Shown here: in pieces, positions 21,275-63,480 of the stretch
Layout: every line of letters starts with the position of its first letter
Numbering within the stretch: position 1 is the first letter of the stretch
Assembly: GCF_032191835.1 (NCBI RefSeq)
Contig: NC_083225.1
Coordinates: 54,684,001-54,748,000 of the forward strand
Origin: Heteronotia binoei
Lineage: Eukaryota
Length of the DNA: 64,000 nt
Direction of reading: 5' to 3'
Program-made: the position numbers and the translations under genes
Notes under the pieces: generated by a model
The model's database searches: none
Told to the model about the DNA's origin: nothing
What the model saw: only the letters and a program-made list of their open reading frames with translations

Positions 21275-21416
21275 CACCAGAAGACACAAACACAAAGCTC
21301 CCTTACACTGAATCAGTGCTTGGGTCCACCAAAGTCAGTATTGTCCACTCCAGTCACAAACACAAAGCTCCCTTACACTGAATCAGTGCTTGGGTCCACC
21401 AAAGTCAGTATTGTCA

Positions 21417-36031: not shown

Positions 36032-36328
36032 AATAGTCACTTGCAAGGTGCACTTGTTTTTGGCTGTGCCACTACCTTTCATAGCCAGTCATGTTTTGCC
36101 AGCTTTTTTCTCTAGGGCTTCCCAAGCTTGCAATATGTGATTGACAGTTGATGACACAAGAATGGGGGAAGGGGGGAGAGAGATATATAAAATGTGTATG
36201 CTATAAGCCCCAGTGGCTCTCCCACTTAAAACTATTGTCTGTCTCCAACTTTTAAAAAATACACGTATAAAATGCTGGAAGGTTTTTCTTTCTTTTATAA
36301 AAAACTTATTAAAAACCTGTCTTTCTAA

Positions 36329-36520
<192 letters not shown>

Positions 36521-42200: not shown

Positions 42201-42869
42201 CCCCTTAATCCTCATGCCCCTCAGAGCATTTACTTTCCAGCAGTGTAGCCAACATACTTGATTACAGACAGGAGACAGGATCATCTGTACAACTTAACTT
42301 AAAGCATGCCCTATATTTGCAACTTGATATATATTTGCTGCTTGTCAATCCTTCTATGCCAAGATAGGAAAACTCCAGTTTTCCAGTAGCTGCATTCTGT
42401 ATATGCATTATTGACATGAAAAAGTATCTGTGTGTAGCCCCAGTCTGGCTGAATTAGTTATGACTTGTTGAAAGCGGGGAACCAGTTAGTCATGATAAAT
42501 TCAAGATTGCTTTCAAATGGGTTAGGCACGTTTAGCTGGACCAGGAGGCCAAAATATCTGAGAACTAGTAACAAGTCATATGGTGAAGTGCTGCCCTGAG
42601 GGCTAGTGTGGGAGCTGACTAGAATGTTGGACTAGGACTGGAGAGATTGTGTTCAGATTGCCACTCAGCCATGAGATTTCGAGCAGTCTCTGTGTCTCAA
42701 CTTTAGTTACCACACAAAAGAAAAAAGGATGTCTCGTTTTAAATATAATTGTATTGTGGAAAAAGTTTGTATTAAAGGTCAGACAAACCTCCTTTAAACC
42801 TTTTAACTGTAATCTAAACTTGGACAACATTCACAATGTATTATAAGCATTTTTTGTTTTATTCCCTAG

Positions 42870-42991
42870 ATTTCTTTAATGATTTGGATGCATTGATGGG
42901 GCCTGTTACCTTGCACAGCAGTATGGAGCACTTGGTCCAATACACACAACAAGGACTTCACTGGATAAGGAGTAGGGCTGAGTTGTCATAG
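42870..42991 (+). CDS. AFF3: AFF3 terminal coding exon (to stop)
   Basis: ccctag acceptor; [40 protein letters not shown] then TAG. Confidence 0.97.
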
Positions 42992-45900
42992 TGAATGCGT
43001 GCTGCTCATCTGGACACTAGATTCTCCCACAGGCAATTCAGTTATTCTAGACACTGTGCTACAGAAATACTCAACAGCATTGCTTCAGACAAATGTGAAT
43101 ACTACTTCTGATGCTAGACAATATTTTTCCAGAGTGCAGAAATAGATGTGTATGTATATTATGCAATGTTTGTCTGTTCTGATACTTTGTCTTTTTCAAT
43201 TCAGCTCCTCTGTAAAGAACAGGAGGGTTGTGTTTACACGCACACACACTCACACTCCACATACACACTCTCCTCTCCTTCAGTACTTAAACAACTAAAC
43301 CAGAACTTCATAGGTTGATTTAACCAGGTACAACAAAAAATTCTCTCAATTCTGAAAAGTATTTTCCACTCAACTTTTAAACACATTCTCAAATAGCTGC
43401 TTAACTGTAACTTTGAAAGAGATGACATTTCTTGAATTAGGCCAATTGGAGGTTCTCTACATCAAAGCAAATTCATCTTGTGTTTTACACTGGAAGAGGA
43501 AAAGGCAGTGTCTGTCCATTCTGTTACCCAGAAAACAGAAGGACCTGTGGTCCAGAAGTGATTCTTCCACGTACACACTCCTCATGACTGGTCAGCCACT
43601 TAGACAATAATGGTGAGAGGATGTAGCAGTCACAGTAAAGACTTCCCTATAACATAGCACATGCTGAATACAACATCAGAAAGATGCAGCATTGAAGTAT
43701 GGAACATGTCTAAAAACATTTTCCTTATGAGTGAAACCATGGCTAGTTTTTCCCCATACCTTAACATGTTAGGGCCATCAGACTCCAGACAGAATTATAT
43801 CTGGAACCAGATCTAGCCTGAATGTTTCCATCCTTTTACCTCGAGCATTGGGATGAGTCACAGAGAATGGAACTGAACCTAGACAGAAAGATTGTTTTGT
43901 GAACATAAAAAGATTACATGTCATATGTATTTTTGAAAATCATTTTGATTCCTGAAAAGCCTTTCTGCCATGTTCAATATACTATTCTGAGCAAACAGTC
44001 ATTTAAAACAGTAGAATGACAGTACCCTATGAAAGCGGATTGGAGAAATTGTTCCCTTTAAAAAAAAACAACACCAAAATATTATAAGTTGTAGCTGACT
44101 TAGCCAGGGAAAAAAATCTCTGCAATATAGGTGTGTCTCTATCAAGGGACATGTATATTTTAATGTATATTTCAGTAAAGTAGCTGGTCTGCAGTTTATT
44201 TATATCCTGCCATTACTTTCAGTTCTCTTTATCCAGAAATCTGGATTTGCTACTTTGTGTGCTAACACAGTTTCCCATTATATTCCTCATCTTTTAGCTA
44301 TGCTTTCATGATTTGATATTTATATGTTGTCTTCAGCACCTGCTGACAAGTTATTAGACAGGAAATTACTCTAGCAATAATTAGTTTTAATGGCAATCAG
44401 AATAAGTCACATCAACTGACACACACAGTAATTTTTTAAGTAAAAAAGAACAGTGTGGTGACAGCTTAAAGGCTAATAGTTTTCTTATAGCTTAAGTTTC
44501 CTGAGCTTGAACCATTTGTTTCAGATACAAGTAATGATCACCTAAAGGACAGATAGATACATTCTGTACAATGAGAAGCAAGAGAGGAAATGTCACAAAT
44601 AATTGAAAAAGTATAAGAGAACACTAGTTGTGTCTGTTTTGTGCAGAGCACACAAGGGGTTAATGCAGAATCTGGAAAGGAGGGGTCAGACCCGTATCAT
44701 TTAACATTTTAATTCTGAAATATTGTTCAGTGTTTGGGTTTGTTTTTTAAATCACATAACTTAGGTCACTTCATTCACATAGGATTCCTGTGTTGACTTC
44801 AGAAAAAGGAACTTAAAATTAAGGCCAGACTGAAGTATGCATGACCAAACCTTTATTTTTTATTTTTTGTAATATGTCAAAGTGGAGGCAACAACAAAAT
44901 GGATGCCAAAGGAGGCCGAATAGCCACAAAATGTCAAGGAGTAAGGCTATGCATAACTCTTAATAGTAATTCTTAAACACTTCAGGCAGACGTGCTGATT
45001 AACAGAATTGCTCTTTATAGTGAACAGTTTTTTTTAAAAAAAATCTGCACAGCCAAACAGCTCTCCAGTGGCCAAACTTAAGCCTTGCTGAGCTAAAATC
45101 TCACCTGACTTCACCTACTTCATAAAAACATTTGGTGAGTGCCAGGAAAGGTGTTGACAAGCACCACGGTCACCACAGCTGCCACATAGGGGACCCCTAG
45201 AATAATCATTATTGGGGGGAAATATTAAGATGACCACAATTTGGCTGCTGCTGTAGGAAGTTCAGTATCTCTAGCAGGTCAGACATGCCCTTCTTATAAG
45301 AAAACCTGCAAAATTGCACACTGACCATAAGAATGCAACGATATTAAACATGTACACTGAAAAAAGGGCATACAACAATACAAGAGTATAGTTTAGCTTA
45401 ATTTAGTAATACTTCCAGTCTCTAAACAATAGCTGTATTACCCATTCTCCATCCAAATAGTGAGTGGTTCTAGTCCCTCAAATCTTAAGTACGCATTTAG
45501 AGAAACACTGGGGCACTTCGTAGCTGTCTGGAAAATACATATGTATTGCAACCATGCGCACAAGCCAATGGTGTGGCTGCCACCTCATGCATAAAATTTA
45601 AGCTTCTGGAAATCACTAAAAAGACATTGTGGTGGCATGCCAAAAAAGCAAACCAGCAAAGCAGAGAAAGGTAGATGTTTCTCAACAGCACATAGTGTGT
45701 GACCTGCAGAAATTAATGTGGGGTCTCAGTTTTATTATCATGTTTTCTTATTTTGTGGCATTTGAGAATCTCGAGTACGTCCCTGTTACAGAATGGTGAC
45801 TAAGTTGAATGCATGCGTATTACCCCACCACCCAATGCAGGCTTTTCAAGCATTTGCCATATACTCCTATGCATCAGCTGTAAGTAAAGAGCTTGATCTG

Positions 45901-46490
45901 ACCATCCCACCAAGACATTATATTTACAAGTAGGCCCATTAATCTTTGCACAAATGTTTGCATGGATTAAAATAACACTGGAACCCAGACCATGGCTGGC
46001 AACAGTTCCCAAGATCACAGTAGCTCCTTTTCTAGAGGTCACCATTACAAAAATCATAACCAGCTCTAACTGGGATCAATATCAATGCAAAGGCTTATCC
46101 ATGGCCAATGTGCAGCAAAATCATTGTGTGCAAATTTATCCCTATTTACATTAATTCAATTTAGGCATATCCATAATTAATTTTGCATGCCAAGGCAGAT
46201 GGAACAACCCCAACAACTTTAGTAAATTTTTGTTTAAAGGTGTCACTTATTTCCATTTCTTTCCCTTTTATGTACAGGTATCAGTCGTTTCATATGTATG
46301 GTTTTTATCTTGGTGTCAGAATTGGTATGGGGGAAAAACAGAGCAATAGGTGCTGGACTTTTCCATAGGTTTGATACCTTCCCGAGAGTAGTATCACAGT
46401 TCTCCTGTCCATATCATTACAACAGGTGTATTTCTGTAGTTTACATTAACTGAGCAATGTAATAAACTGGAGTATCCTGTACAGTACTTT
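42992..46490 (+). other. AFF3: Putative AFF3 3' UTR (end uncertain)
   Basis: Repeat-poor, AT-rich stretch after the stop. AATAAA at 46461 is a candidate poly(A) signal; the end cannot be fixed without RNA data. Confidence 0.4.
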
Positions 46491-49400
46491 ATGCTGTAAA
46501 ATATGTACATACTGATATATATTGTAGCATTTTTAACGCTTTGAAGTGCTTTATTTATTGGATCTGTTGGCATTTTTCTCCAAGACCCTTTTCGGAGGTG
46601 ACAGTAACATTCAACATACAGCACAGGCAGCTATCTTGCTGTTGATTCCAAGATCCCTGTTGTAGTTATAAAAGAACTATTTCATGAGATTAATTTGAGG
46701 CTATAGCTCCTGAATTGTGATCACTTTGGGGGAATTCAGAATTCACACCATAATTCCTTTAAGCAGTTCTAACAATGTCTACATGCATCCCAGTAATACA
46801 CCAGCCAGTAATATACCACTGCATAACATAACCCTCAAAACCATGCCTTGTATGTCGTTAAAAGAGACAGCAACTACTTTTCCATTCTGCCTTCTTGAAA
46901 GCCAAAAACAGGTTGTTAATAAAAAAAAAATCTATAGGAAGGCCCTGCAATTTCATTTCTGAAACAATATTGATGAACTTAAAAAGATGTATCCTACAAT
47001 GGTTGTTTATTGATACATGCAATGGGAGGTGAGTCACATGCTTTTTGTTGCTGTCAAGTCACAGCTGATTTACAGCAACGCTGTAGGCTTTTCAAGGAAA
47101 GAGACGTAGAGGTGGTTTGCCATTGGCTGCCTCCAGAGAGCCAGCTGTGGTTAGTAGTTAATCTCTAATCTGGAGAACCAGTTTTGATTCCTCCACATGA
47201 AGCCAGCTGGATGACCTTGGGCCAGTCACAGCTCTCTCAACCCTACCTACCTTACAGGGAGTCTCTTGTTGGGAGAGGAAGGGAATGTGATTGAAAGCTG
47301 CTCCAACGCTCCTTTGGGGGTATCAAACCAACTCTTCTTTTCTCCCCCCCCCCCCCCCCGTTGTCATGACCCTGGTATTCCTTGAAGGTCTCCCATCCAA
47401 ATACTAGCCAGGACTGACTGCTTAGCTTCTTTGATCTGATGAGATCAGAGTAGCCTGGGCCATCCGGGTCAGGGCAGTCACATTCTACTTTTAGTCTGTT
47501 TCCTCTTTTAGAACTATGTATGATGCGAGTGGCTTGTAGTTTCCTGAGAAGTTTTGTCTGAATCAAGCATGTGATGGATGAAGGTGACTAGGTTGCTTAC
47601 AACCTTGGTGGTTTCCCCAGTTTGGAAATGAAAATTACGGCAAGTACATGCAATGTCTTGGCCTTTTCCTCCTCCTGAAAAGTATCCCATAAGTTTCCAT
47701 GGGTTAGCAGTTGCATTTATTTTCTGCCATGTTTACAAAATAAGATATTCAATCCATCCAACCCATTTCAGGACAAAAAGAACAATGTGAGAGGTTGGTT
47801 TGTTTATAGCTCAGTTACGTAATTAAGTTCATGTGTATAGCGTGATAAAATTATTGACAAAGATTGCTTTGCTGTTTGGAAATGTTTCTGTTTCTACCAT
47901 TCATACAAAACTTGTGTAGCACAGTTGCTGGAATGGTGAAAACCGTCCTGTAATGTAACAGACTGAGCCTTAAGGATTTGTTTTTAAAAAGCACTTTTAT
48001 ATTAAAAGTTAATATTAATTCATCAATAGTATTACTTTTTTATGTGAAAATAAACCATGAACTCAACACCTTTACATCTCAATTTTGTCTTAACCTTGTC
48101 TTATTGAAAGCTTCCTTCAGAATTCAGCAAGTCTCCATTTGGTTGTGTTGTCAGTATTGCCAGAACCTGTTACTAAATCCCAAATCAGCCCATGCAGTCA
48201 TGAGAAGTACATAATTCAGCAAAACCAGCTAAACAGACTATATGGACTGGGTAACATGGATGATTTTGTGTATCGTGTTAAAGGAAAACAATCTAAATTC
48301 AGCTTCATATTCATGATGCTGCCTAAGTGTGGAACTTTGACTGCCGTCACTTATTCTTTATATCTCTAAACATTGCTAATCATCTACCACAGACCAGGAG
48401 GCTGATTTTGAAATACTCTCACTGCATCTTCATTTGGCTTCTGTGCTCTCTCCCATTTGTTTGGGCACTTGAGTTTAGCAGCATTCTCCTCCGTTCAGCA
48501 GGTCCTCTTTGTCTTTCTGTTTCCATATAATTGCTCTTGTCATCTTCTACTCCTTAATTTTCATCAAGGACTGAAACAGCTGTAAAACACATAAATATTT
48601 AGCACCTAGATAACACTTTCTGATTGTCGAAAGTACTTCACATAATGATGATCTCAGCAACCACTGCCAACAACCCTGTGATGCAGGGCTGTGTTACTTC
48701 ATATTGCAGAGAGCTACCTCACAGTGCACTCCTCAGCAGGTCCATTCAGAATCCTAAGCCTCTTCATTAAGGTTGTGACTGAGATTACATTTGGGCCATG
48801 ATTTCCCCAGCTTCTAATCACCACTCCTTAATATTTATGCTAAGCAAAGGCAAAAAAGACCACAACCACTAAAATCCAGCTCAGAGTTAGGCATATACAT
48901 GTAGACATCACAAAAAAATAAACCATAAGAGCTCAAACAGTATTTGGTATTACCAAAAATAGCCCTAAATGGCACTGCAGGAGAGGTTTACTTTCATCTA
49001 AGAAGGCTTATGTGGAAAATAAATTCTTATCATAAGAGATAAGGATAAAGCCATAAACAAGGCAGAAGACAAAGAGCAGTTATCAGTAAAGCTTGGTCTC
49101 CACCTAGGAGCACAAACTATAGAGAACCATATTATTGTTTCCTTTCTCAGAAGTTTAACTTACTGGTTCAACATAGTTTTGCTTTTTTTAAAAAATGCAG
49201 CTGTCAACAGTCTTGATGGGTTTTGTAATTTTTACACAATAACCCTTTCCCGCATCTATTCTCACACGTTACCTCAGTCTCACTCTTTATCCCTGGACGA
49301 ATATACTTCCCATTATTTCCCCTGAGCAATATATGCCATCTGTCTGGATCATGAGCTAAATGGCTGAGATCCTTTTGCAACCATTTTAACATCATTTGAG

Positions 49401-51711
49401 CAATTTTACCATCAGCAGTAGGGTGCATTTTATATAAGCAGCTCAGCTGATTAAAGCCAGACTATGTGATCAAGAATCTACACAATTCACAAACTATAAT
49501 ATTTCTTGCAAACATTTTTATCTTCTTCAAATGGTCTTGTGAGGCAGGCAGCGCTGCAAGCAGTTGTTGTTGTTTTTTTAAAATCAGTCTTAAATATGTG
49601 CCCTTCATGGACCCCTTTTTTGGACAGAGCCCAGTGATGTGAGCAGAGTTTATTTTCTCCGGAGGTGGTAGGCGTGCTGATCCATTGCTTCGTATGTGAT
49701 TCTATCTGTTGTACAAGGGCCTCATTTTGGAGTGCCACTTTAAGTATGAACTTTAATTGGTGGTTTCTGCGCAGCAATTATTCTATCTTGTTGTTTTCCA
49801 TTCTTTGCGATGACAGCACAAAGGAGAGGCATAAAGGAGACAACAATGGCCAAATTTTATGCTGAGCTCTGGGGCTCAGTCTAGTTCAGTGGTGTAGGCC
49901 TGGAAAGGTGGCAACAATGGCACAAATTCTTTGCTGGGCTCTGGGCTTCAGTCCAGCTGGGTGATACAGGCCTGGAAACAATGGTACAGATTTTTTTGCT
50001 AAGCTGAGCTCCAGACTTTAGTCCTCTCCAGGCAGGGGGGTTGGCTGCTGGATCGAGTGGGCCCAGCAACAGCAGCGATGCCACAGATGTGAGGCACAAC
50101 TGTGGCACTGGCACAAATTCTTCCACTGAACGGTCTCAGGCCTCTTTGGACATGGCCCAGCAGCAGTGACAATGACAGAAATGATACTGAGGCCGGCTGT
50201 AAGTGACTTTTTAAAAGACCTGCAAGCAGCAGCCTTAATATGGCTGCAAGCCTGTTTGTCATAGGAAAATTGTGATCAGAGAACAATGTCAACTTGGGAT
50301 GTTGAAAGTATGGTCAAGCATTAGATGTATCAAAGACATTATGTCACACCCCTGTCCTGCAGCAGACATTCCTGCACAAAAATGTTGCTAATAAAAAGCT
50401 TTCCACAATGTCTAAGGTGTCTGACTCTTTTTGCCATTTCCAGGATGATAACCTCACCTTAGTATTATTGATTGATTGATCAAATTAATACCCCACTTTT
50501 CTTACCAATGGGGATCCAAAGATGCTTACATCATCAGATTCTCCTCCATTTTATCTTTACAACAACCTTGGTAGGTTAACCTGACCACCAAGGTCACCAG
50601 CATATTTCCATGGTTGAATGGAGTTTTGACCCTGGTGTCCCAGATCTGATCCAACCCTCTAACCCCTGCACCACGCTAGTAAGCTCAAGAAGTTAATTAT
50701 TTGCTGTTCAGATGAAATGACAAATAGTGGTTTGCTGCAAAAAGGAGGCAATTCAAACATCTAAAACTCTTTTCGCTGCCACTCAGGAAGAACGCTTTTC
50801 ATCTTGCTCCTTGTGAGGCAACTCACCTCCGAGTAAATTAAATAAAATTTTAAAAATTTAAAAGAGAGATGAAAAGAAGACGGGTTTTGTGGATTTCCAC
50901 TATGTCATGATGGCTTTAAAAGGGTTTCTTCAGAACTGGACCAACTGTCGCTTTAACAGGGTGCTGTTAAACAGCCATTTTCTGTGCCTAACTACCTAGG
51001 GGTTCACACAACAGAGCTGCCTGCTCTTGCTGTCACCAATTCCCTTGAAGGCATGACTGGATCGACTGGACTCAGAAGAGCTCTTTTAAAAATAAACATT
51101 CCCTCTCTGTGGTGTGGTGAGGTGTTGTGCTACAGAGCGTTAATCTTAATGGCTCTTTTCTAAGGCTTTGGCTTCAGCCAGCCTGAATGATGGTGCAGTC
51201 CACCTCTGTGGTGAGGTGTGATACAACAGTGACTGTTCATGGTATGATTACTATTGATCGGGGTTTCTTGAAATGTATTCCTCAACTGAAACAAGCTACA
51301 GATATCAGAACTACATTTTGAATAATTCTACATCTTTGGAATTTTTCCTCCAAACTACGTATTAGTTACAGACTTGGGCAAAATCTGACTGTTTGGACTT
51401 GCAATATTGTTTGGCAGCAATATTGTTAGCAGTTAATGTTTTGTATCACATGGCATTTTTTTTTGTTTCCTCACCTTACTTCATTGGCTGCTGCCTCCTG
51501 GGCTGGGAAAATGTTAACCAAATGATATCATTTCTTATGTTATTGGAAGCTGTGTGTTGGCATCCCTCATTTATCTTCCCATTACATGCAGCTTTGTTCA
51601 GACCTTTTTCACAAGTAAATATGTTCAGCAGAATTCCTGGTATTTCTTTCCAGCACTCACAAGTTCACTTGTATCTCCAACATGTCCAAATGTTCTCCAA
51701 GATGAGAAACA

Positions 51712-51793
51712 CTGAAACACTCAATAAGGGCTTTTACAGCGTAGTCTCTTTTGTTGAAACATTATCCAATATAAAAGTGCCAAAGAGCAGTAA
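51712..51793 (-). pseudogene. AFF3: Pseudo-exon copy of AFF3 exon 36340-36433
   Basis: ttacag|T TAC TGC TCT TTG GCA CTT TTA TAT TGG ATA ATG TTT (YCSLALLYWIMF). 82 nt vs 94; frameshift to TGA; donor lost. Confidence 0.9.
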
Positions 51794-52257
51794 CTGTAAA
51801 TCAATGAGAAGTACGGGTTTTTAATAAGAAAGATTTTTTTAAAGAAAGCAAAACATTCTAGCACTTTATATATGTATTTTTAAAGGCTGGAGACAGACAA
51901 TTGTTTTAAATGGGAGAGACACTAGGACTTATAACACACGTTTGGTGTCTCTCCCCCCCCTCTCCGTTCTTGTATGATCTATTGTCAATCACACTTTGCA
52001 AGCTTGAGAAGCCCTAGGGGAAAAAAGATGGCAAAACATGACTGCTTATGGAAGGCAGTGGTACAGGAAAAAGCAGGCACACCTTGCAAGCAACAATTAC
52101 TATTTTGTGTCAAGCAAGAAAGTCACGTCAGTCACCAGGCAGTTCACAATGTTTCATATGCTCATCAAGCTCTTTCATCACTCCAAGCTATTCTACAGAA
52201 ACTCTGCTGTGCTTTGTTCTACAAAGAACAGCTGATTCAGGGCTATTCCTACATGTG

Positions 52258-53330
52258 ACCATCAAGGGAAAAGGTCACCAACCTAAAGGAGTTGCTTCAT
52301 GAGTAATAGAGGTGGACCCAAGCTAGGGTCGCCAGCCCCACAAACTAAGGGCAGTTACAGCCATGCTACCCTAAAACTCTTTGAAGCCAAAACTTTAGCC
52401 CAACTTTTATATGGAGCTATGATAGGGGCAACATCATCTTCTTTTGCCCCCCTTGAGCGTGTCCAATCAAAGTTCTTAAAAGCTGTACTACAAGTCCCCG
52501 ATTGGGTGCCAAATGCATTGGTATGTCAGGAGACCGGCACTTTCAGAGTGGAAGTTAAGGTGTGCCTTGCCTCGTTAAATTACTTGCTTAAGATCAGTTA
52601 TTTTCAGCAAGGCTTGACCCCACTGCTCCTCCTGGATGAACATCAAGCTGCATGGCTTAAGACAATCCAATGTAAACTTGCAAGTCTAGGCTTTTCACCA
52701 TCCATGATCTTAAGGATGGGTTTTGACCAGGCAAAACAGGCTATAAAACAATGGTTATTGGACACTGAACACAGCTTGATTTAGGGTGGGTCCCTACTTT
52801 CTTGCTCTCTATGAAACCAGATATATAGTCAAACTGGCTGCCTATCTGTCCCTCTTGGAGGTGCATAGTCACAGGAGGGCTTTCACACTTGTAAGGTGTG
52901 CTACCCTTCCCTATGCTGTTTTAGATGGGCAATTTAATATAATTCCCTATGGGAAAAGGCTTTGCCCCTGCAATGAAGGAGAAATTGAGACTATAGATCA
53001 TGTTCTTCTATGTTGTCCATTCTATCAAGATAATCACCTCTTTGATTAACAGAATACCTGGAAGAATGAGTCTGGAGTATGTTAGGCTACTCCTAGAAAA
53101 CAAAAACCCCAACAACTACAGCCTCAGTCACAAAATTTTGTGCAACAGCCGATAAAATCCATCAGTTGCTTTTATTATCAGGGTCTATGTAAATAACTAT
53201 GATATTACTGTATATTTATATTATTATCTATTTTTAATTGTGGGGTTTTAAATCAATAACTTTGTAGTATCTTATCTATGCTGGTCTTTGACTGTACAAT
53301 AAATTAAACTAAACTAAACTATTTTTGATT
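52258..53330 (+). mobile_element. 3' fragment of a non-LTR retrotransposon (clade uncertain)
   Basis: Post-RT ORF2-like translation with a CCHC-type motif (CPCNEGEIETIDHVLLCCPFY), stops, and a (TAAAC)n tail. Confidence 0.65.
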
Positions 53331-54050
53331 ACAACCATGCAAATAACATAACAATTTAAAAGAAAGTTTTGTTTCATTCGTTTTTTCCCTCAGACGTTTT
53401 TCAGGATGTGACCTCTGGATGGTTGTATTTTAGGCATATTCTAAGGAAGTCCCAATTTAATTGCACCATTCATAATCAAAGGTAAATACTGAGAAATATT
53501 CCGCCTATATTGAAATTAAACAGCAACATAAAATGTTTTTAAAACGTTTTATTGTTTTAAAATTGTAATTGTAGACTTTTTAACTGATTGTTAGCTGCCC
53601 TGAGTCCACTTGCAGAGAGGGCAGGATAGAAGTTGGAAGTAATAATAATAATTAATTAATTAATAAGTTTAAGATTACTTGGGGTTGTGTGATACCTATT
53701 TTATTTTCCTTGGGCTGATTTGAGTTAGGTTCGTTATGCTCCACTAGATGGCAGTCTCTGTTTAGGAGATTAAAAGAACAAAGCAAAAGTTTGTGGCAAC
53801 CCTACTTTGCTCTGTATGGAGTCAGACAACACAACAGAGTTTAGTCCTCATAACTCTCATTCTGAATCCTTCCCAGGTACACTAAATATGCAAATTAAAG
53901 TAGCTCATCTGCTGTGTAACAGCCAGTGAATTAGAAATGTTTTTAGTGCTATAAGATTGAGTCCTCCTCCTGCCTTCCCTGATGACCTCTCTCCTTAAAC
54001 AGATGCAGAGATTTTTTTTTTTCCCTTTTGGATTAAATCCCACCCACAAA

Positions 54051-55595
54051 CGTAAAATCATCGAGAGGGCAGTGGCGTTGCAGCTACAGAGATTTCTAGA
54101 TGACGCTTCTGTCCTAGACCCGTGCCAGTCTGGCTTCCGACCGGGCCATGGGACGGAGACGGTCTTGGTTGCCTTAGCAGATGACCTCCAACGGCAACTG
54201 GATCGAGGCGGTGTAGCAGTGCTGATGTTATTAGATCTGTCGGCTGCATTTGATACGGTCGACCATCGGCTACTGATCCACCGCCTCGCCGACATTGGGG
54301 TTAAGGGGTCTGCTTTACAATGGCTCTCCTCTTTCCTCACGGGTCGGGGACAAAGGGTGGCGATCGGGGGTGAACGATCCCAGAGGCGCACACTAGATTG
54401 TGGGGTGCCTCAGGGAGCAGTCCTCTCCCCGATGTTATTTAACATCTATATGCGCCCCCTTGCCCAGATTGCCAGGAGGTTTGGGCTGGGCTGCCACCAA
54501 TATGCAGATGACACCCAGCTCTATCTGCTGATGGACGGCCGGCCCGCCTCCCTCCCGGAAGGCCTGGATCGGGCGTTACAGGCTATCGCAACGTGGCTTA
54601 GACTGAGTGGGCTGAAGCTGAATCCGGCAAAGACAGAGGTTCTCTGTGTGGGTCGCGGCGCTCCAGGGGGGGAAATATCCCTCCCGACCTTCGATGGTGT
54701 GCAGCTAAAGGCGGCGCAGCAGGTGAAGAGTCTGGGTGTTTTACTGGAGCCTTCATTATCAATGGAGGCCCAGATAACAGCCACTGCCAAGTCAGCATTC
54801 TTCCATCTGAGGCGGGCAAAGCAGTTGGCCCCTTTCCTGGAGCGTCGGGACCTAGCAACGGTGATCCATGCGATGGTCACCTCACGATTGGACTACTGTA
54901 ACGCCCTCTACATGGGGCTGCCTCTGTGCCGGACCCGGAAGTTACAGCTAGTGCAGAACGCGGCGGCCAGGCTGTTGCTCGGTCTCCCAAGATGGGAACA
55001 TGTACGGCCGGGGCTACGCGAACTGCACTGGTTACCGATTGTATACCGGGTCCAGTACAAAGTGCTGGTTATCACCTTTAAAGCCCTATATGGCCGAGGA
55101 CCAGCCTACCTGAAGGACCGTCTCTCCCCGTATGAACCCCAGAGAGCACTGAGGTCAGTAGGAAAGAACAGACTGACTACCCCTGGGCCAAGACAAATCA
55201 AACTACAGAACACTCGCTCTCGGGCCTTTTCGGCCGCAGCCCCACATCTCTGGAACCAACTCCCAGAGGAGGTGCGGGCCCTGCGGAACCTTGATCAGTT
55301 CCGCAGGGCCTGCAAGACCACCCTTTTTAAATTAGCTTATGAATAACTGAATTATACCGACAACGAAGAAAATCCGCCATCAGCATCAACTAGAAGAACG
55401 TCAAGGATAGCGTTATAATATGTTTTAGTTAATTGTTTTAATCAGGTTTTTAAGGTTAATTAATGTTTAATTTAATGTTTCTAATGTGACTGTTTTATTG
55501 TTGGTGCACCATTGGTCACCGTATTGTTAGCCGCCCTGAGCCTGCTTCGGCAGGGGAGGGCGGGGTACAAATAAAATTTATTATTATTATTATTA
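54051..55595 (+). mobile_element. 5'-truncated L2-clade LINE with open RT frame
   Basis: QSGFRPGHGTET, LLDLSAAFDTVDH, GVPQGAVLSP, YADDTQL; open to TAA at 55346; 3' end ttagccgccctgagcc...(ATT)n; many CpGs retained. Confidence 0.92.
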
Positions 55596-56115
55596 CTTTT
55601 GCTCCGCAGAATTGTTTTCAACCCCCCCCCCCCAAATTTCCCTCAAATAGGGAGTCTCATTAAAAAATGAGTTTGAACCATTTCCCAGCTTTAGTATGGT
55701 GAGAAACCCATGCTGATTTAATATTTTTTGCCACAATAGCAGGAATATATATATTTACTTTATTAAAAAGCTTTATGATACATTTTAAATAGTATTTATT
55801 TTTAAAATGAATAAAGAATTGGCATGAACAAAGATTATTGGCATTTGGCTTAAAAAAAAAAAAAAAAACCCTGACAACATCCTTACTTCAATAGGGCTCA
55901 GAGGAGCATCACAATGCAGCTGTACACCCAGATGAGCAACTATGCTTGTGGAGTTCCTTATCAAGGCTCTCTATTCTGATATGTGGTTAGATATGGTTAA
56001 AGGGACTTACAGAAAGCAAGATTTTGTTCACACTGCTTTAGGCAAAGATATATTCTCATTTTCTCTATCCAGCTAATGTCAATAATATCCTATTTAATAA
56101 CCTCTCCATTAAATC

Positions 56116-56600
56116 AACCATTGGTAATTACCATGGGGGGTCATTCTCTGAGGACTGGAGGACATCTTGGGTCTTTCCCACCATTGTGTCAGGGAGGCAG
56201 GAAATAGAAATCTTTCTTCTTCTTCCTGTGACACCAGAACACCCATCTCCTCAGTTTGGGTAGCTCCGAGAAGCAGTTAAACTAGTAACCTTACTCAGAA
56301 ACAAGGAACAGTAACATTAACAAGAAAAAACTGTAACAAGGGAAAAACAGAGATAACTCTATAAGCAGCGTAGGATAGAGACAGAACAGAAAGGATTAAA
56401 ACAGGTAAGAGTGATGTAAAGCAGTGGGCAAGATGTCCTCCTGTTCTCAGAGAATGACCCCTCATGGTAAGTACCAATAGCCATTCTCCCTCTGAGTCGG
56501 AGGACATCTTGGGTATTCCTAGAGCAGTAGATCAGTGACTGGGCGGGGCATCACTCTCTTCCGCCAACAAGTGCTGCAAAACTTTTCTGCTGAATTGTAG
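56116..56600 (-). mobile_element. DIRS-type (tyrosine recombinase) retroelement 3' terminal fragment
   Basis: On -: FSRKVLQHLL (YR C-terminal GRKVLQ-like), then an ICR-like block. Inverted repeat 56118-56170 vs 56427-56478, with a third GGAGGACATCTTGGG near 56499. Confidence 0.7.
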
Positions 56601-57980
56601 GGTGTTTTTACATTCAGTTTTGAACCAAAGTATTCAAATTGCCTGCCACTGTTACATTTTTACATTTGTGGATTTGCTGCACACATTTTGTGGAGCTAAA
56701 CTTCTGCATTGCAGTTCATACACAGATTGCTGATGTCAGTTACAGGAACTGCAGGTATATGGTTCTGAGACATCACATTTTATCCTGAAGCCTGATTGCT
56801 ACATTCTGCAGATCTTTCCGATGTTCACAGTTTCCTTATTACCCTATGATGTGGATTATTGTGAGCAAAAATTAAACTTTGTGAGACGAGCTGTGATCAG
56901 GGCAGCCAAAATACCATTGCTTAGTACAGGGATGTATACAATTGCTTAAAAATCATCACCATACAAACGCTAGTTAGAATCCAATTTGTTAGTTTCTTTA
57001 AATTGCTTTCTCTGGAAGTATCTTGATTCTTCAGCATTCCAAAGATCAACAGCTACCTGAAGTACCATAGTGTTGTCTCTTTCTGAGGTGCAAGTTTTGT
57101 ATTAATAAATGCTAATTTATAGGCATATGTTCTTGCAGAATTCTTAAAGGATTTAATAGAATTTTTTTTAACTTTCTATAACCCCCCCCCCCCCAAAAAA
57201 AAAAACCCCTACAAACATTTGACCATGCTATTCAGGGAATGCCAAAGCAAAGCAAAATTCCTTACAGTCCATACCCAAAGGTTATTTTCCCACAGCTGAA
57301 ATACTGGAAATGTCTTGATCTTGGGGTGAGGGAAAGGTGAGATGTGGGGAGAAGTTGCAAGCAGAGGAATTGATTTTTCCTTCTTGCTTATTATATTGCA
57401 GCCTCAGGTCCAGATTAGATGGGATGGTATAATCATGGCTGCTGCAAGGCTGCTACTACCACTTCAAAGTCATTCTAAAATGCCACAAAGACCCCAATGC
57501 TGATCATGCCTGCAGCTCAGTGCTCTTGTCTCTACCCACATCTACATACCTTTTCAAGATCCCAAACCACAGTGTGTGTATGCTGCCATTTCAGCACTTG
57601 ATAAGGCATGGTGGGGAGTGAGTGTCTCAGCTGACCATACCAACTTTTAAATGGTGCAGTGTCTTCATGTCTAATTTGGCCCTCAGTTCCCCATATTATG
57701 CATATTTGGGCTAGACTTTCATTTACAAGTTTAGTCTGTTCTTGTCATAGCTTTAGCCAAATAGGGTTTAGAAATACTTCACTTGGGCACATGCAATGTA
57801 ATTTTGCAGCGTAATCTCCTGTCAGGTTGGTTTATGGTTCTGGAAACTACAGTGTTATTAAAATTGAGAGACAGAGAAAGCGAGACTCCTAGTAAGTACT
57901 CTAATTTTCTCCAAAGTGGATAATCGAGTAACTTTTTTCTTATATAGGATTGCATTTTGATCAGTTTTCTTTGTTTTTAG

Positions 57981-58730
57981 AAATAGTCCAGTAAAAAAAT
58001 ACAAAGTGGAGAATGAAATCAAAGCCAATGGAATGAGAAAATTGAACAAGGAATGTGAGACTGGAGAAACAGGATTCCTGGAGGAAGTCTTTCCTTGGAG
58101 TAAACAGAATGGAATTCACCATAGGGACAGCACTGCCATTTTTAATGGACACACTCATCGTTCTAATAGGACCTTAAAGACACCGGATAGCTTGGTGCAC
58201 TCTGACCATAAGGGTGCAACTAGACTGTCTCCAGGCCCTGTGCAGGAGGAGGAAAGGAAAGAGAAATCTGACTTCAGAGGCTGCTCTGTACAGCATTTGC
58301 AACAAAGCAACAAAAATACAGAACTTTTACAGGATCCTCATAGGACTATGAGTAATTCATCTTCATCTCTGCACAGTAATATTAAAATAAATGGTGCTTA
58401 TCATTCCACTGTTCAGAGGCTTTCAAGCACAAAAAGCACTGTTTCAGTATCTGCTCCTAGTCAGGCGGTTTCCTCAATCATGTCCAAATCTTCTAATAGC
58501 AGTTTTATTTCTGACTTTTATTCTCATTCAAGACTTCATCGTATACCTACCTGGAAGTGTGAATGTGCAGAGTTTAACACAACAACAATAAAAGCATTAA
58601 CATAACAAATCATAAAAACTGACCATTACATTGTTGAAAAAATCTGCATAAAGGGAGCGCAACATAAAAAGCAGAAGACATTATTCCAGAAGTTGAAAAC
58701 AATGGTCATGAAACAGCAGTATGCAGGCCA
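57981..58730 (+). pseudogene. REV1: REV1 exon 6 remnant, inverted relative to exons 2-5
   Basis: ttttag|A NSPVKKYKVENEIKANGM...KQNGIHHRDSTAIFNGHT...LHSNIKINGAYHSTVQ...FISDFYSHSRLHRIPTWKCE. Homology breaks near 58580 (TAA at 58603) and resumes weakly (LFQKLKTM ~ IFPGREKLKKM). End approximate. Confidence 0.93.
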
Positions 58731-59326
58731 TAAAACAATCAGCTAAAAATGATGAGACAAAACCACTAAATAATCAAAACTGAAACAGGAGATAACTTTT
58801 GGCTAGGAATATAAATGATAGTAGAGTGTGCTACAGGCACTCTTCCAGAGGGAGGACATTTAAGATTTGAAAAAGTCCCTTTTATATTTAGCACTTACTT
58901 CACTGCTACCTGGCAGTCTTGAGAGGAACGGCTCAATAAGCATGCTGTTCAGCAATTAATTCTAATTGCTTTTTAGCTTCAAAAGATCTACACAGAGGTG
59001 CCTATATACTAACATATTATCACTGTATTGCACTCACAACGTAGCAAGACAGACCTTGACTCCTACACTGGCCCCCCCCAAAAAATGGAATTCAAAGCAT
59101 TAATTTGGAAGACTTTTAAAATAAATTAATCTGAATATACACTTTTTTCAGAATACAGTCTACAAACAGAATTACTAAATAATAATTTCTCTCCTCCTGA
59201 ATGTAAACCCAGGCCAAGAAGTTTCTGAAGACCTGCCCAAACATTATCAACATAAAGTTATCAGAGAACAGCAGAACTGAATAACTGCCAACAGTCTCAA
59301 TGAGAAAATCAAGATCACATACTTAT

Positions 59327-59466
59327 AGCCTGTTGAACTCTGTCCAGAGGTATTGTTAGGATCTGGAATAGAATCTTCTAGTTTGCATGTGGTATTGAAA
59401 CAGAAGCCTTTCTGAATATTTGACGGCTTTGTGTAAAGCTGCAAAAGGAGATGTCCAGCTTTTATG
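59327..59466 (-). pseudogene. REV1: Decayed REV1 exon 5
   Basis: ttttag|(S)IKAGHLLLQLYTKPSNIQKGFCFNTTCKLEDSIPDPNN vs IKAGRLLSYIPYQLYTKQSSVQKGLSFNPVCRPEDPLPGPSN. Four-codon deletion, frameshift near the 3' end, donor ATAAGT. Confidence 0.92.
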
Positions 59467-61472
59467 CTAAAACAAAACATGTTTAGTTTATCAAGGATGC
59501 CAATACTAAAATTTTAATGTATACCTAACTCTGACCTTTATACATCATATGGGGAAAAATGGTCTATGTTCAATAGTAGTCTAATTTTTGGGGAGGGGGG
59601 AGGGCATTCCTTTAACCCTGGTCTAAATTCTGTGCATGGACATAGGACTTCCTCATCTCCCCCCCCCCCCTCACACTGCAACATGAAATGTTTCCCCATG
59701 CTGCTCCTGAGGGATGGACGATTCCCAGGAGCAGCACAAGAGATGAACAGCTGCTGCAACAGGGAGAGAATTAGCAACTATCTTCTTTCCCTTTTGTGTG
59801 TATGGATCTATTCTACATGATCCAATCCATTATGCATTAATTGCTACCTTGTTTCCTTTTTTTCCAGTCACTTCATTTCCTAAGTGATTTTATACATATC
59901 AGTAATACATTTTAAATAAATAATTCAAAATTCTAGGGTAGAGATTCAGAGAGCTGCTTTAGAAGTACCTAAAGGCCTAGGCATATCCAGTTTGCATAAC
60001 AGACTACTCGATGTCACATCTTAGGGCTTTCTGCACGCTCCTGGTTTTCCTGGCAGTCAATCCACAAGCACTGAAATTGGCTTGGGCACAGTTCTGTACA
60101 TCTTCTCTCGCTTTGCACTACTGGAGTCAGCTTATTTTCTTCTGCACATGCCTTCACCAGTGAGGATTTTCAAGGGAAGGAGCTATCATAATTGGAGGCA
60201 TCACAGCACCCCTCCTTTTAAAACAAAGGCAACAAATATTGATCTAGCGCTAGATGGTTGCAACAGGCTCAGCAAGTTCATCGAATTCAATTTTTTCAGA
60301 ATTCAGAGTTCAGAATTCAGCAAGTTCAGCTTTCAGTATTTTAAAACAAAAACATAGGTCTCTAGTCTCCTCCTTTATGGTGAAAAAGAAAAAGACATAT
60401 CTCCACAAGTGAAAATGCTAGACATACTTTTTTCTTCACACAATGAAAGCCAGACATTGAGAACCAGATAAGATTGTTACAAAGCTGCACTGATATCAAT
60501 ATTTCACTGCTGTTTTTTAAAAAGAAAAATTAAACCATCTGTCTTCATGCTGTGCGGGGAGTGGTTTGATTACAACATACCAATAATCAAGAAGTTGCCA
60601 GGAGGTGAGGTGGGTGGGAGGAGAAAGGATAATGAAAGCAATGTAAGTATTATAGAAAACACTGCAATGAAAAGAACAACAGTAAGATCATGTTACCCAA
60701 TTAGAAAAAACAAGAACATTAGCAGTTATGTGATCAGTTTTCTATGGGAATGGTGTAATCAGATCTCTTACAATGGGGACAAGTCCCAATTACACAGAAC
60801 GTTTTCTTGGATCATCCAGTACAATCCAAATATTTCAGTAAAACAACTGCTATATTCTAAGAATGAAAATAATCCAAATACTTTTAACACCTGAAAGTGA
60901 TATAGTAAATAGATTTTCTGGGATAGACTGTGAAACATCCAAAACCACCATTTTACATCAGTTTTAAACTGTCACATTTTAGTTATGTTTTTAAATAGTG
61001 TGTATTACAAAACACATACTCAAAAATATTTCCAAAAAAAATAGACATTGTTTTTAATTTTCAAACCTAAATAAACTATTCAGCACAAACTCAAAAATCA
61101 CATTCAATGCTTATCAGTGAGATTTTGATAATTTTGGCTCATGTACCTCACACCTTACAGTCATAAAATTTACTTTTATCAGCTACCCTGTGAATCAACT
61201 GTCTGAGTTTCCTTGACTGACTGAAGCTGACCTTGCTATTTTAACACACTACCCTTCAGCATTTTACAATCACTTCCCACTAGAGTTCATCAGTACTTTC
61301 TACACAGAACTTTGGGATAGTAAACATTTTCTGTGAGCATAATCACACAGTACTTACCAGAGAGTTAAATATTTGAAAATGTTGTTTTAGCTCTTTTTCA
61401 AAGAAGGCATCAGTTCGCAATCTTATAACCTTTTAATCCTCCTCCTCCTCATCGTGGTTCTCCAGTATTTAC

Positions 61473-61642
61473 CTTCTTTTTTCCATTCTGGTCGAACTAC
61501 TCCCCCCCCCCCCCTTTGAGTCCCTTTACTTTGGCATTTGGAAGATTTTTCACAATGTCCATTGTTTTGGATCTGGAATAACGGACATGACATTGCCCTC
61601 CATGCAACATCGGTCGCCTTCTTAGTTCATCAACTGAAGTAC
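61473..61642 (-). pseudogene. REV1: Decayed REV1 exon 4 (BRCT domain)
   Basis: TSVDELRRRPMLHGGQCHVRYSRSKTMDIVKNLPNAKVKGLK...VVRPEW vs DPSAEELRKLMMLHGGQYHVYYSRSKTTHIIATNLPNAKIKELKGEKVIRPEW. Acceptor AG->AC; G13 run shifts the frame; 170 nt vs 169 expected from the protein alignment. Confidence 0.93.
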
Positions 61643-62074
61643 GTGAAATAGGTTTACAACATTAAAACATGCTGCAGGCTTGAATATGTTCAATATTCTA
61701 TCACAACAGTTGGTTCTTCTCTGATTTTAATAAAATAGCCACTTAGAGTAAATCAGAATTTTAGTTAATGATCTGTCTTTTGACCAATTAATGATATCTA
61801 AATAAATATACATATTTCTAAAATCTCAGAGAAACTTCCCTAAGATATAGTTCAAGGTTCAACTAAAATCAACGACAAGGTTCAAGATAACACTTTTGAA
61901 AAATCTGCTACTGAAACAAAACAATCCGGGTATGTGTACAAAAGTCCCAAGTATGAGATTTTGATACTTGGGACTTTTATATACATACACAAAATGTTTT
62001 GTTTCACTGTGAATATATGAGACATGGTAGTTTTGGGTTTGGACCACAAACCATATAGGGAAAAAAGGAGACTG

Positions 62075-62200
62075 AACATGAACTGATTGTTAAGACTTTA
62101 TTGTGTGACTCTGTATAGTGGCTGGTTTTCTTCTTGTTGACCCCCCTCCCTTTTTTGTTTTTGTTTGCAGTTTTTGTACCTGGGCAGATATATATCCACC
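62075..62200 (-). pseudogene. REV1: Decayed REV1 exon 3
   Basis: ccaag|GGYISAQVQKL vs GGYMAAKVQKL; then degenerates into A/G-rich sequence with a stop. 3' boundary approximate. Confidence 0.75.
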
Positions 62201-62736
62201 CTTGGATTTAAATATAATATACTTTCAGATGTTGAGCAGTTAGTCAATACCCACTTTGTCTATTATGTGTATAATTACAGATGACAAGGTCAAAGGACAT
62301 TACAATCAAAAATTTTAATTTAAAGTACAATACAATACTAATCAGAGTTACTCCCATTTAACTTCAACTCACTTAGAAGGGTGGGACTCCACTCAGAATC
62401 CCAGCACCGTTAATAGATTTAGCTTGGCAAGCCACTTGTACACATCTTTTCAACTGAATAATCACATGAGCATTTTGTAAGCGATTGCTATCCAATTTAA
62501 GCTACTTGGACGGGGGGGGGGGGATACATAGACACAAGATCAACATAGCAGTTTTCCAAGGTAAAGGCAACACAGCACAGCCTTTACTGTATAGATAGCG
62601 CACAGGTGAAAATAAAGCAAGTAAAGAAAATTTCTCTGTTAGATCCACTCATCAATTCCAGGAAAAAGCAGTCAAATTTTTAAAGAATTACATTTGTAAA
62701 CATTTTTTGTCAGAAGATATTTCATGTTGAACCGGC

Positions 62737-62800
62737 CCACGTCCCCCAGCCATCTCTCTCACTGGATCGTTTTCTCCATCCACCTTGCTTCACAAGGAGG
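62737..62800 (-). pseudogene. REV1: Decayed REV1 exon 2 (start exon)
   Basis: (V)KQGGWRKRSSERDGWGTW vs REV1 MRRGGWRKRAENDGWETW. ATG replaced by GTG at 62793; acceptor AG present; donor reads GCCGGT. Confidence 0.88.
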
Positions 62801-62849
62801 CTTTTAATCACGGCGGGGGAAATAAATAAACCAAAATTTAAAAACCAAG

Positions 62850-63480
62850 AACCCCAAAAGAGGCGCGCAGGAGCGCAGGCCTCCGCCTCTCTGACCCGCG
62901 TGTGAGCGAGTTGTGTCCGAAGCGGAGGCTCATCGTGACACCCTCGTTCGTCTTCCGAAACCCTCGCCTAGGGGGCGCCTGACAAGCCGCCGCCGCCTCC
63001 TGTTCCGCAAGGCCCCAGCAGCGCCGCGGGTGCCGGGCGGCAGAACAAGCCTCGGCGCGGCATTGCCGCTCGCCCCGAGGAGAGAATGACGGGAAGCCGC
63101 CGCTACCGCGCATTGTTTGCCCCAGTCCCGGGCGTCGCCGCCGTCTGCCCTGGGGGGCCGGGTGGAAGAGCTTCACGTCGCGACCTCCCGCGCAGTCCCC
63201 GTCGCGCCTGCGGCTCCCGCCGCCGCCACAGCAGTAGCAGTGCCCGCTTCAGCAAATGCCTCGCCTCTCTTCACCTCCTCGCCGCTCCACCTCCGCCGAT
63301 CTTCCCTCCCTCCCTCCAGAACGCAGCCTCGCGCCACCAACCGCCGTTGCCCGCCTCCCTTCTCCTCCCCTCGCTCTGGCCGGCCGGCTTCTGCCCTCAG
63401 GCGGCGCCCTCTGGCGGCGTGCGCCACCAAGGATGTCGCCAACGGCACGAACCGCGGGCAGGAGAGTTGCTTCCGTGTTA
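62850..63480. promoter_or_regulatory. CpG island, probable REV1-derived promoter/non-coding exon 1
   Basis: Very GC- and CpG-rich block with sharp edges, immediately 5' of REV1 exon 2 on the - strand. Confidence 0.8.

What the first reader, a model, noticed from the sequence alone, without database searches (positions are those of the whole stretch)
51446..63480. Segment order fits tandem duplication followed by inversion, and predicts what lies beyond the window
Seen, reading the - strand from 63 kb leftwards: REV1 exons 2-5, exon 6 (flipped), then AFF3 intron 31.8->36.7 kb. This is a circular permutation of the ancestral order (AFF3 31.8 kb...AFF3 end...REV1 exon 6). Inference: a tandem duplication created a REV1-exon6|AFF3-intron junction. 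An inversion then flipped the junction block, and exon 6 was inverted again. Reinsertion from a circular DNA intermediate would give the same order. Prediction: the rest of copy 2 (decayed AFF3 last exons and an intact + strand REV1) lies to the right of 64 kb.
Basis: inference. Interest (0 to 1): 0.75.

Follow-up and report, generated by a model that had tools for sequence, protein, structure and literature searches.

The report
Old inverted AFF3–REV1 duplicate patchwork
Just downstream of the lizard AFF3 gene lies an old, decayed patchwork of copied pieces: a 4.9-kb AFF3 piece and the first six exons of the DNA-repair gene REV1, with exon 6 flipped; the layout is real but ordinary, and the window cannot show how it arose or whether an intact REV1 lies beyond its end.

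Summary
Window 51467-56116 is an inverted copy of AFF3 31820-36681 (intron plus one CHD exon), K2P 0.150, with different LINE insertions in source and copy. REV1 coding exons 2-5 lie on the - strand (62793 to 59313) below an intact CpG island (62850-63480). Exon 6 lies on the + strand (57982-58581).

A related lizard contig (L003) carries exon 5, intron 5 and exon 6 colinear. Against it, the exon-6 block (56970-58581) is inverted relative to the exon-5 block (58824-60058). 543 bp of intron 5 are missing, and exon 6 is cut about 75 bp before its 3' end.

Both copies are dead:
- REV1: ATG to GTG, a stop in exon 3, a frameshift in exon 4.
- AFF3 exon copy: a 2-bp deletion and a lost splice donor.

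The copies are about as old as the split from two related lizard species (intron K2P 0.163).

But its key exon 6|AFF3 junction is not preserved, and it needs a reused breakpoint. A single complex template-switching duplication fits at least as well. Earlier notes of this scan on the same window agree. This is an ordinary old complex duplication.

The parts
31820..36681 (+). Source segment in the intact AFF3 gene: 3' part of an 11.4-kb intron, CHD exon 36341-36433, and about 250 bp of the next intron
   Evidence: Self-BLAST; AFF3 exon map by tblastn with snake AFF3 proteins; homology ends abruptly at 31820 and near 36681-36700
32245..33741 (-). BovB/RTE-type LINE present only in the source copy (inserted after the duplication)
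   Evidence: 400-aa reverse-transcriptase-like reading frame; source gap 32249-33743 against a 0-bp gap in the copy; 80% identical to a LINE copy in the rattlesnake locus L010. No family scan was run on this ORF
51467..56116 (-). Inverted, decayed copy of AFF3 31820-36681
   Evidence: Six colinear blocks; substitution-only K2P 0.150 (95% 0.129-0.169, n=1796)
51712..51793 (-). Dead copy of the AFF3 CHD exon: 2-bp deletion (frameshift), 9-bp deletion, splice donor destroyed
   Evidence: Alignment of 36305-36480 with 51828-51668
53961..55343 (+). LINE reverse-transcriptase ORF present only in the copy (inserted after the duplication)
   Evidence: Pfam RVT_1, E 1.8e-35; copy gap 54055-55595 against a 0-bp gap in the source
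56117..56969 (.). Filler A between the AFF3 copy and REV1 intron 5. It matches nothing and holds an inverted repeat (56120-56169 / 56429-56478, 92%) that starts 4 bp from the junction
56970..58581 (+). REV1 block 2: distal part of intron 5 plus exon 6 (57982-58581). Exon 6 is cut about 75 bp before its 3' end, and its reading frame is still open
   Evidence: Aligns to L003 1776-3538 in + orientation; truncation point; tblastn and PDB matches
58582..58823 (.). Filler B: A-rich, matches nothing; lies between the truncated end of exon 6 and the inverted intron 5
58824..62849 (-). REV1 block 1: proximal intron 5, exon 5 (59468-59313, 12-bp deletion), exon 4 (61637 to about 61470, frameshift in a G13 run), exon 3 (62200 to about 62090, in-frame stop) and the first coding exon (62793-62731, ATG changed to GTG)
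   Evidence: Aligns to L003 1-1232 in - orientation; tblastn and frame translations; DNA read directly
62850..63480 (-). CpG island at the head of the REV1 fragment: GC 71%, CpG observed/expected 1.03
42869..48069 (+). Last AFF3 coding exon (42869-42988) and 3' UTR/downstream DNA colinear with rattlesnake. This shows the patchwork lies downstream of a complete AFF3 3' end
   Evidence: tblastn; conserved blocks 42848-43195, 46431-46507 and 47828-48069 against L010

Best explanation
This is a real, old, lineage-specific complex duplication. Three nearby segments were copied and joined in mixed orientation in the DNA downstream of AFF3. The segments are 4.9 kb of AFF3 (intron plus one CHD exon), REV1 promoter to intron 5, and REV1 intron 5 to mid-exon 6. 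I think the most likely origin is a single event rather than three separate ones. That event would be either replicative template switching of the FoSTeS/MMBIR kind or breakage and rejoining during one duplication. The path would run as follows: copy AFF3 36681 back to 31820 on the opposite strand; jump to REV1 intron 5 and copy forward into exon 6; jump back 543 bp upstream onto the opposite strand and copy backwards through exons 5-1 and the promoter. The copies were non-functional from the start and have decayed since. The functional REV1 is inferred to survive outside the window, most simply to the right on the + strand, and no second AFF3 3' end need lie in between. Shown here: the segments, their orientations, their decay and their similar ages. 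Inferred: a single event, and the existence of an intact REV1.
For: All three segments derive from the AFF3 3' part and the REV1 5' end (adjacent, same-orientation genes in human) and sit in mixed orientation. The two REV1 blocks are nearly contiguous in the normal gene (L003 1-1232 and 1776-3538), which fits a short-range switch or a single break. Unmatched fillers of 853 and 242 bp sit at two junctions. No flanking inverted repeats exist that could have driven a later homologous inversion of exon 6. The ages agree: AFF3 source against copy K2P 0.150; REV1 fragment introns against L003 0.186 and 0.140; species-level intron distance to the same sample 0.163. Source-specific and copy-specific LINE insertions and multiple disabling changes show real, old paralogous DNA rather than an assembly duplicate. 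Discontinuous duplications mixed with inverted pieces are the described hallmark of MMBIR events (PMC2621351).
Against: Microhomology at the junctions could not be examined: the fillers mask the junctions and the parental REV1 of this genome is not available. The fillers may be later transposon insertions rather than templated insertions. The observed order is one of only 8 of 48 possible arrangements that equal a circular permutation with at most one flipped piece, which mildly favours a tandem-duplication precursor. No reads could be laid, so block orientation rests on the assembly alone. The exon 6 frame is still open over 200 codons, which has a probability of about 0.01 under neutral decay. 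This is not explained by immediate death of the copy.
Confidence: 0.4

Rival explanations
1. A tandem duplication of the span from AFF3 31.8 kb to REV1 exon 6 created an exon 6|AFF3 junction. An inversion then flipped the block from the REV1 promoter to AFF3 36.7 kb. A third event re-inverted the intron 5-exon 6 block. The rest of copy 2 (AFF3 3' exons, then intact REV1) lies to the right on the + strand.
For: Read on the - strand, the order is REV1 promoter-exon 5, exon 6 (flipped), then AFF3 31820 to 36681. This is the exact circular permutation expected. A human tandem duplication spanning AFF3 exons 10-24 and REV1 exons 1-3, with both genes in the same orientation, is documented (PMC11137988). 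The AFF3 and REV1 pieces have similar ages.
Against: The model needs three events and five junctions. The diagnostic exon 6|AFF3 junction is absent: the truncated exon 6 end at 58581 faces intron 5, not AFF3. The re-inversion must therefore have broken exactly at the duplication junction. It must also have deleted 543 bp of intron 5 and acquired fillers at both ends. No inverted repeats flank the flipped block.
Confidence: 0.3
2. Assembly artefact of order or orientation. The duplicated pieces are real, but one or more blocks (for example the exon 6 block) are mis-oriented or mis-joined in the assembly.
For: No read-level check was possible. The exon 4 frameshift lies in a G13 homopolymer, a typical site of length errors. 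The A-rich filler at 58582-58823 is low-complexity sequence.
Against: There are no N runs anywhere in 51-64 kb, so the joins are within contiguous sequence. The breakpoints lie in unique sequence (inside exon 6 and in intron 5), not at repeats. The copies differ by 15% and carry private LINE insertions.
Confidence: 0.12
3. Circular intermediate. The span from AFF3 31.8 kb to REV1 exon 6 was excised or copied as a circle (joining exon 6 to 31.8 kb). It was reopened at 36.7 kb and reinserted in inverted orientation in the intergenic DNA.
For: It gives the same circular permutation as the tandem duplication.
Against: It still needs the separate exon 6 flip with a reused breakpoint. It predicts about 15-25 kb of further inverted AFF3 3' end and intergenic DNA to the right, for which there is no evidence either way.
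Confidence: 0.08
4. No duplicate. The REV1 pieces are the original 5' end of the only REV1 gene, which was broken in this lineage (loss of REV1).
For: The fragment lies at exactly the species-level distance from REV1 of related lizards: 0.14-0.19 against 0.163. It sits at the syntenic place next to AFF3. No second copy was seen in the window.
Against: The AFF3 piece joined to it is demonstrably a duplicate. REV1 is retained across vertebrates: 1061 homologues passed E 1e-50, though only the best 120, all mammals, were listed, and related lizards carry an intact exon 5-6 region. Loss would have to have persisted for about the whole branch (K2P about 0.075 per lineage).
Confidence: 0.08

Closest known systems
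Human tandem duplication of AFF3 exons 10-24 plus REV1 exons 1-3 (PMC11137988)
   Same: The same two neighbouring, same-orientation genes are involved. The duplication spans the AFF3 3' part and the REV1 5' exons, and would place AFF3 3' exons behind a REV1 promoter.
   Different: The human case is a recent, simple head-to-tail duplication of about 280 kb in one patient. The lizard structure is old (15% diverged), inverted, internally flipped and decayed, and it is shown only as a 12-kb patchwork. A tandem precursor is inferred, not seen.
Complex genomic rearrangements by FoSTeS/MMBIR template switching (PMC2621351; inverted copy-number variants, PMC10766186)
   Same: Discontinuous duplicated segments from one neighbourhood are joined in mixed orientation, with extra sequence at the junctions and the original genes left in place.
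   Different: Junction microhomology and templated origin of the fillers could not be tested. Those cases are recent human variants, whereas this is a fixed, ancient event in a lizard lineage.
Unprocessed (duplicated) pseudogene fragments within old segmental duplications
   Same: The fragment retains its promoter CpG island and introns, carries disabling mutations, and is truncated at a duplication breakpoint.
   Different: Identity (about 85%) is below the usual 90% cut-off for annotated segmental duplications. The parent REV1 copy has not been seen. The CpG island has not decayed.

Membership tests
Unprocessed duplicated pseudogene fragment (REV1) | Introns and promoter retained (not a retrocopy) | tested here: met
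   Exons 2-6 are separated by introns. Introns 4 and 5 align to the related-lizard contig L003. A CpG island lies upstream.
Unprocessed duplicated pseudogene fragment (REV1) | Disabling mutations or truncation | tested here: met
   ATG changed to GTG, a stop in exon 3, a G13 frameshift in exon 4, a 12-bp deletion in exon 5, exon 6 truncated and inverted, and no exons 7-23.
Unprocessed duplicated pseudogene fragment (REV1) | An intact parent gene exists elsewhere in the same genome | not testable with these tools
   Only this window of the genome is readable. Earlier notes of the scan hold no other REV1. The homologue search listed mammals only.
Intrachromosomal inverted segmental duplication (AFF3 piece) | Two copies of at least 1 kb, colinear, with the source retained | tested here: met
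   31820-36681 against 56116-51467 in six colinear blocks.
Intrachromosomal inverted segmental duplication (AFF3 piece) | At least 90% identity (the conventional annotation threshold; own knowledge) | tested here: not met
   Substitution-only difference is 13.5% (K2P 0.150); BLAST identity is 70-85% with gaps. It is an ancient duplication below the threshold.
   The truncated exon 6 end (58581) abuts filler B and intron 5. AFF3 31820 (56116) abuts filler A and the intron 5 end of the exon 6 block.
   This lies beyond 64 kb. 63480-64000 matches nothing.
FoSTeS/MMBIR complex rearrangement | Several duplicated segments from one neighbourhood in mixed orientation | tested here: met
   AFF3 piece (-), REV1 intron 5-exon 6 (+), REV1 promoter-intron 5 (-).
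FoSTeS/MMBIR complex rearrangement | Microhomology or templated insertions at the junctions | tested here: inconclusive
   Fillers of 853 and 242 bp match nothing in the window or in the fetched loci. The parental sequences needed to score microhomology are not available.

The most novel reading that the evidence does not exclude
The scrambled fragment is the only REV1 5' end in this genome. On this reading, a lizard lineage broke and lost the translesion-synthesis scaffold polymerase REV1 at about the time it split from its relatives, while the orphaned promoter CpG island stayed active for some other transcript.
Probability: 0.07. Interest if true: 0.75.

Novelty: new member of a known kind. 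Interest (0 to 1): 0.25.

Why it matters
If the layout is as assembled, it is a clean, datable example of a multi-segment inverted duplication fixed in a reptile lineage. It involves the same gene pair (AFF3-REV1) that is duplicated in a human patient. It matters mainly for annotation: the REV1-like exons at 57.9-62.8 kb and the AFF3-like exon at 51.7 kb are dead copies and should not be merged into gene models. Only if no intact REV1 exists would it bear on a larger question, the loss of a translesion polymerase in a vertebrate. The undecayed CpG island and the still-open exon 6 are small puzzles that RNA data could settle.

Tried and rejected
- Neighbouring windows: searches of the scan's notes by place, by the words REV1 and AFF3, by sequence (P0002) and by other words gave only notes on this same window.
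- Squamate REV1 for synteny: the third big protein search, with cetacean REV1, listed only the best 120 hits, all mammals. It gave no lizard or snake REV1 and was in effect wasted.
- Snake synteny: the rattlesnake AFF3 locus L010 confirms a colinear AFF3 3' end but shows no REV1 exon within 10.9 kb beyond the conserved 3' UTR block. REV1 orientation in squamates was therefore not shown. Same-orientation adjacency rests on the human case.
- Fillers: 56117-56969 and 58582-58823 match nothing in the window or in any fetched locus. There are no tRNA-like or Rfam hits in 43-64 kb.
- Inverted repeats that might have mediated the exon 6 flip: none.
- Different ages for the two REV1 blocks: rejected. 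The values 0.186 and 0.140 differ with z of about 2.2, but the AFF3 blocks scatter just as much (0.107-0.222).
- L003 as the functional REV1 of this same species: rejected. The AFF3 locus of the same sample is 0.163 diverged from the window.
- Early MAFFT-based intron distances were inflated by forced alignment and were replaced by BLAST-block estimates.
Full report
**What is in the window**

The window has two N runs (10364-10505 and 35796-36031) and none in 51-64 kb.

AFF3 lies on the + strand. tblastn with snake AFF3 proteins maps these exons:
- a large exon at 2042-3076;
- further exons at 7001, 11778, 12820, 17338, 19180 and 24896;
- a CHD exon at 36341-36433;
- exons at 39441 and 41019-41174;
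- the last coding exon at 42869-42988.

The large exon is AFF3 by Pfam AF4_int and by named snake and bird AFF3 hits. DNA at 42848-43195, 46431-46507 and 47828-48069 is colinear with the AFF3 3' end of a rattlesnake locus (L010). The AFF3 3' end is therefore complete, and what follows lies in downstream or intergenic DNA.

**The AFF3 copy**

Self-BLAST pairs 31820-36681 (+) with 56116-51467 (-) in six colinear blocks. Homology starts abruptly at 31820/56116 and ends near 36681/51467.

The substitution-only distance is K2P 0.150 (95% 0.129-0.169, n=1796). Each copy has private insertions:
- a BovB-type LINE at 32245-33741 in the source only;
- an RVT_1 LINE ORF at 53961-55343 in the copy only.

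The copied CHD exon (about 51793-51712) has a 2-bp deletion, a 9-bp deletion and a destroyed splice donor. This is a real, old duplicate, not an assembly duplicate.

**The REV1 pieces**

The 214-codon open frame at 57961-58602 (+) matches the solved human REV1 core (3GQC, E 8e-9) and REV1 proteins in the representative library (names).

tblastn with a full-length REV1 (P0002) places the residues as follows:

| REV1 residues | Window position | Strand |
|---|---|---|
| 1-19 | 62793-62731 | - |
| 18-35 | 62200-62140 | - |
| 62-104 | 61637-61512 | - |
| 116-171 | 59468-59313 | - |
| 168-371 | 57982-58584 | + |

Nothing beyond residue 371 is present anywhere in the window.

The 5' exons are disabled:
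- the start codon reads GTG;
- exon 3 carries an in-frame stop and an insertion;
- exon 4 shifts frame in a run of 13 G;
- exon 5 lacks 12 bp.

A CpG island (62850-63480; GC 71%, CpG observed/expected 1.03) heads the fragment, while the flanking DNA has observed/expected 0.25-0.50.

**The flip, tested against a normal gene**

A word search with the exon 6 frame found open frames on short public contigs of related lizards. The contigs were then fetched.

Contig L003 (sample SRR13336341) carries exon 5, intron 5, exon 6 and 1.4 kb of intron 6 in one orientation:
- L003 1-1232 aligns to window 60058-58824 on the - strand;
- L003 1776-3538 aligns to window 56970-58575 on the + strand.

The exon 6 block is therefore inverted relative to the exon 5 block. 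The two blocks are nearly contiguous in the normal gene. The missing 543 bp include at least 160 bp that are ancestral, because L004 shares them.

In L003, exon 6 runs about 75 bp further to its donor site. In the window, homology stops at 58575-58581, inside the exon. L003 intron 6 has no match in the window.

Two fillers, 56117-56969 and 58582-58823, match nothing in the window or in any fetched locus. The first begins with a 50-nt inverted repeat 4 bp from the AFF3 junction. The second is A-rich.

**Ages**

Contigs of the same two samples for the large AFF3 exon (L011, L007) calibrate the species distance.

| Comparison | K2P |
|---|---|
| AFF3 intron, window vs SRR13336341 | 0.163 (0.146-0.181, n=2381) |
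| AFF3 intron, window vs SRR13336339 | 0.178 |
| The two samples vs each other | 0.164-0.165 at both loci |
| REV1 fragment intron vs L003, exon 5 block | 0.186 |
| REV1 fragment intron vs L003, exon 6 block | 0.140 |
| AFF3 source vs copy | 0.150 |

The REV1 fragment sits at the species-level distance. It is not an older paralogue. The AFF3 duplication, at 0.150 between copies, is about as old as that species split. The AFF3 copy and the REV1 fragment are thus compatible with one event or closely spaced events.

L003 is not the functional copy of this same species, since the AFF3 locus of its sample is 16% diverged from the window.

On the window's branch, exon 6 has 27 private changes (20 replacement, 7 silent). 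The two closest functional lineages have 9 and 17. This fits relaxed constraint, but the numbers are small.

**An unexplained point**

Exon 6 is still an open frame over 200 codons. I used the indel rate of the AFF3 copies and a simulation of 0.075 substitutions per site. The chance of no frameshift is about 0.04 and the chance of no stop is about 0.24, jointly about 0.01.

Possible reasons are a lower indel rate in exon-like sequence, a later death of this block, gene conversion from an unseen functional copy, or chance. I could not separate these.

**How it arose**

Read on the - strand, the order is: REV1 promoter to exon 5, exon 6 (flipped), then AFF3 31820 to 36681.

A human patient carries a tandem duplication of AFF3 exons 10-24 plus REV1 exons 1-3, with the genes described as being in the same orientation (PMC11137988). 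The ancestral adjacency and this type of duplication are therefore plausible.

The sequential model has two weaknesses:
- Its diagnostic junction is absent. The truncated end of exon 6 faces intron 5 through filler B. The intron 5 end of that block faces AFF3 31820 through filler A. The second inversion would have had to break exactly at the duplication junction.
- No inverted repeats flank the flipped block.

A single complex duplication by template switching joins discontinuous and inverted duplicated pieces, as described for MMBIR (PMC2621351). It yields the same layout without reusing a breakpoint.

In the other direction, only 8 of 48 possible arrangements of three pieces equal a circular permutation with at most one flip. 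This mildly favours a tandem precursor.

The models differ in what lies to the right of 64 kb:
- the same exons on the - strand, under the circular intermediate;
- no AFF3 exons, under template switching.

**What could not be done**

- The scan's notes hold nothing on neighbouring windows.
- The last large protein search returned only mammals, so REV1 orientation in other squamates was not established.
- The rattlesnake flank shows no REV1 exon within 10.9 kb beyond the AFF3 3' UTR block.
- No contig taken for human was saved or compared.

**Verdict**

The prediction is untested. The feature is an ordinary, old, complex segmental duplication that left dead AFF3 and REV1 pieces.

Noticed in passing
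window 62850-63480: The CpG island at the head of the dead REV1 fragment is undecayed (GC 71%, CpG observed/expected 1.03, against 0.25-0.50 in the flanks). The fragment is about as old as a 16% species divergence, so this suggests the promoter is still unmethylated in the germ line and may drive some transcript.
   Followed up: partly
window 57982-58581: The flipped, truncated REV1 exon 6 keeps an open frame over 200 codons. The estimated probability is about 0.01 under neutral decay since the duplication, while the much shorter exons 2-4 are all disabled.
   Followed up: partly
window 56120-56169 / 56429-56478: A 50-nt inverted repeat (92% complementary, 259-nt spacer) starts 4 bp from the end of the AFF3 copy, with a third partial arm at 56465-56517. 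There are no target-site duplications and no other copies in the window. It could be a transposon or a fold-back scar.
   Followed up: partly
window 21282-23228: A GC-rich tandem array inside an AFF3 intron, with nested periods of about 67 bp (21413-22440, 97% identity) and about 165 bp (22439-23228, 95%). One 70-bp unit also occurs inverted at 4726-4795.
   Followed up: no
window 47828-48069 (also 46431-46507): Non-coding blocks about 5 kb downstream of the AFF3 stop codon are 78-80% identical to rattlesnake DNA at the colinear position. They are probably conserved AFF3 3' UTR elements.
   Followed up: partly
window 32249-33741 and L010 6528-8041: A BovB/RTE-type LINE in the lizard AFF3 intron is 80% identical over 1.5 kb to a copy in the rattlesnake locus, which is higher than nearly all orthologous non-coding DNA between the two.
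   Followed up: no
window 3236-4661: Two adjoining LINE reading frames (266 and 223 aa, reverse-transcriptase-like by eye; not scanned against Pfam) lie directly after the large AFF3 exon, on the same strand as the gene.
   Followed up: no
window 61912-62006: A near-perfect hairpin (43-nt arms, 86% complementary, 9-nt loop) lies in the intron between the REV1 pseudo-exons 3 and 4.
   Followed up: no
window 31398-31676 and 38276-38553: A pair of inverted 280-bp repeats (85% identical) flanks most of the duplicated AFF3 source segment. They are probably two copies of a short interspersed element. The left one ends about 145 bp before the duplication breakpoint at 31820.
   Followed up: no
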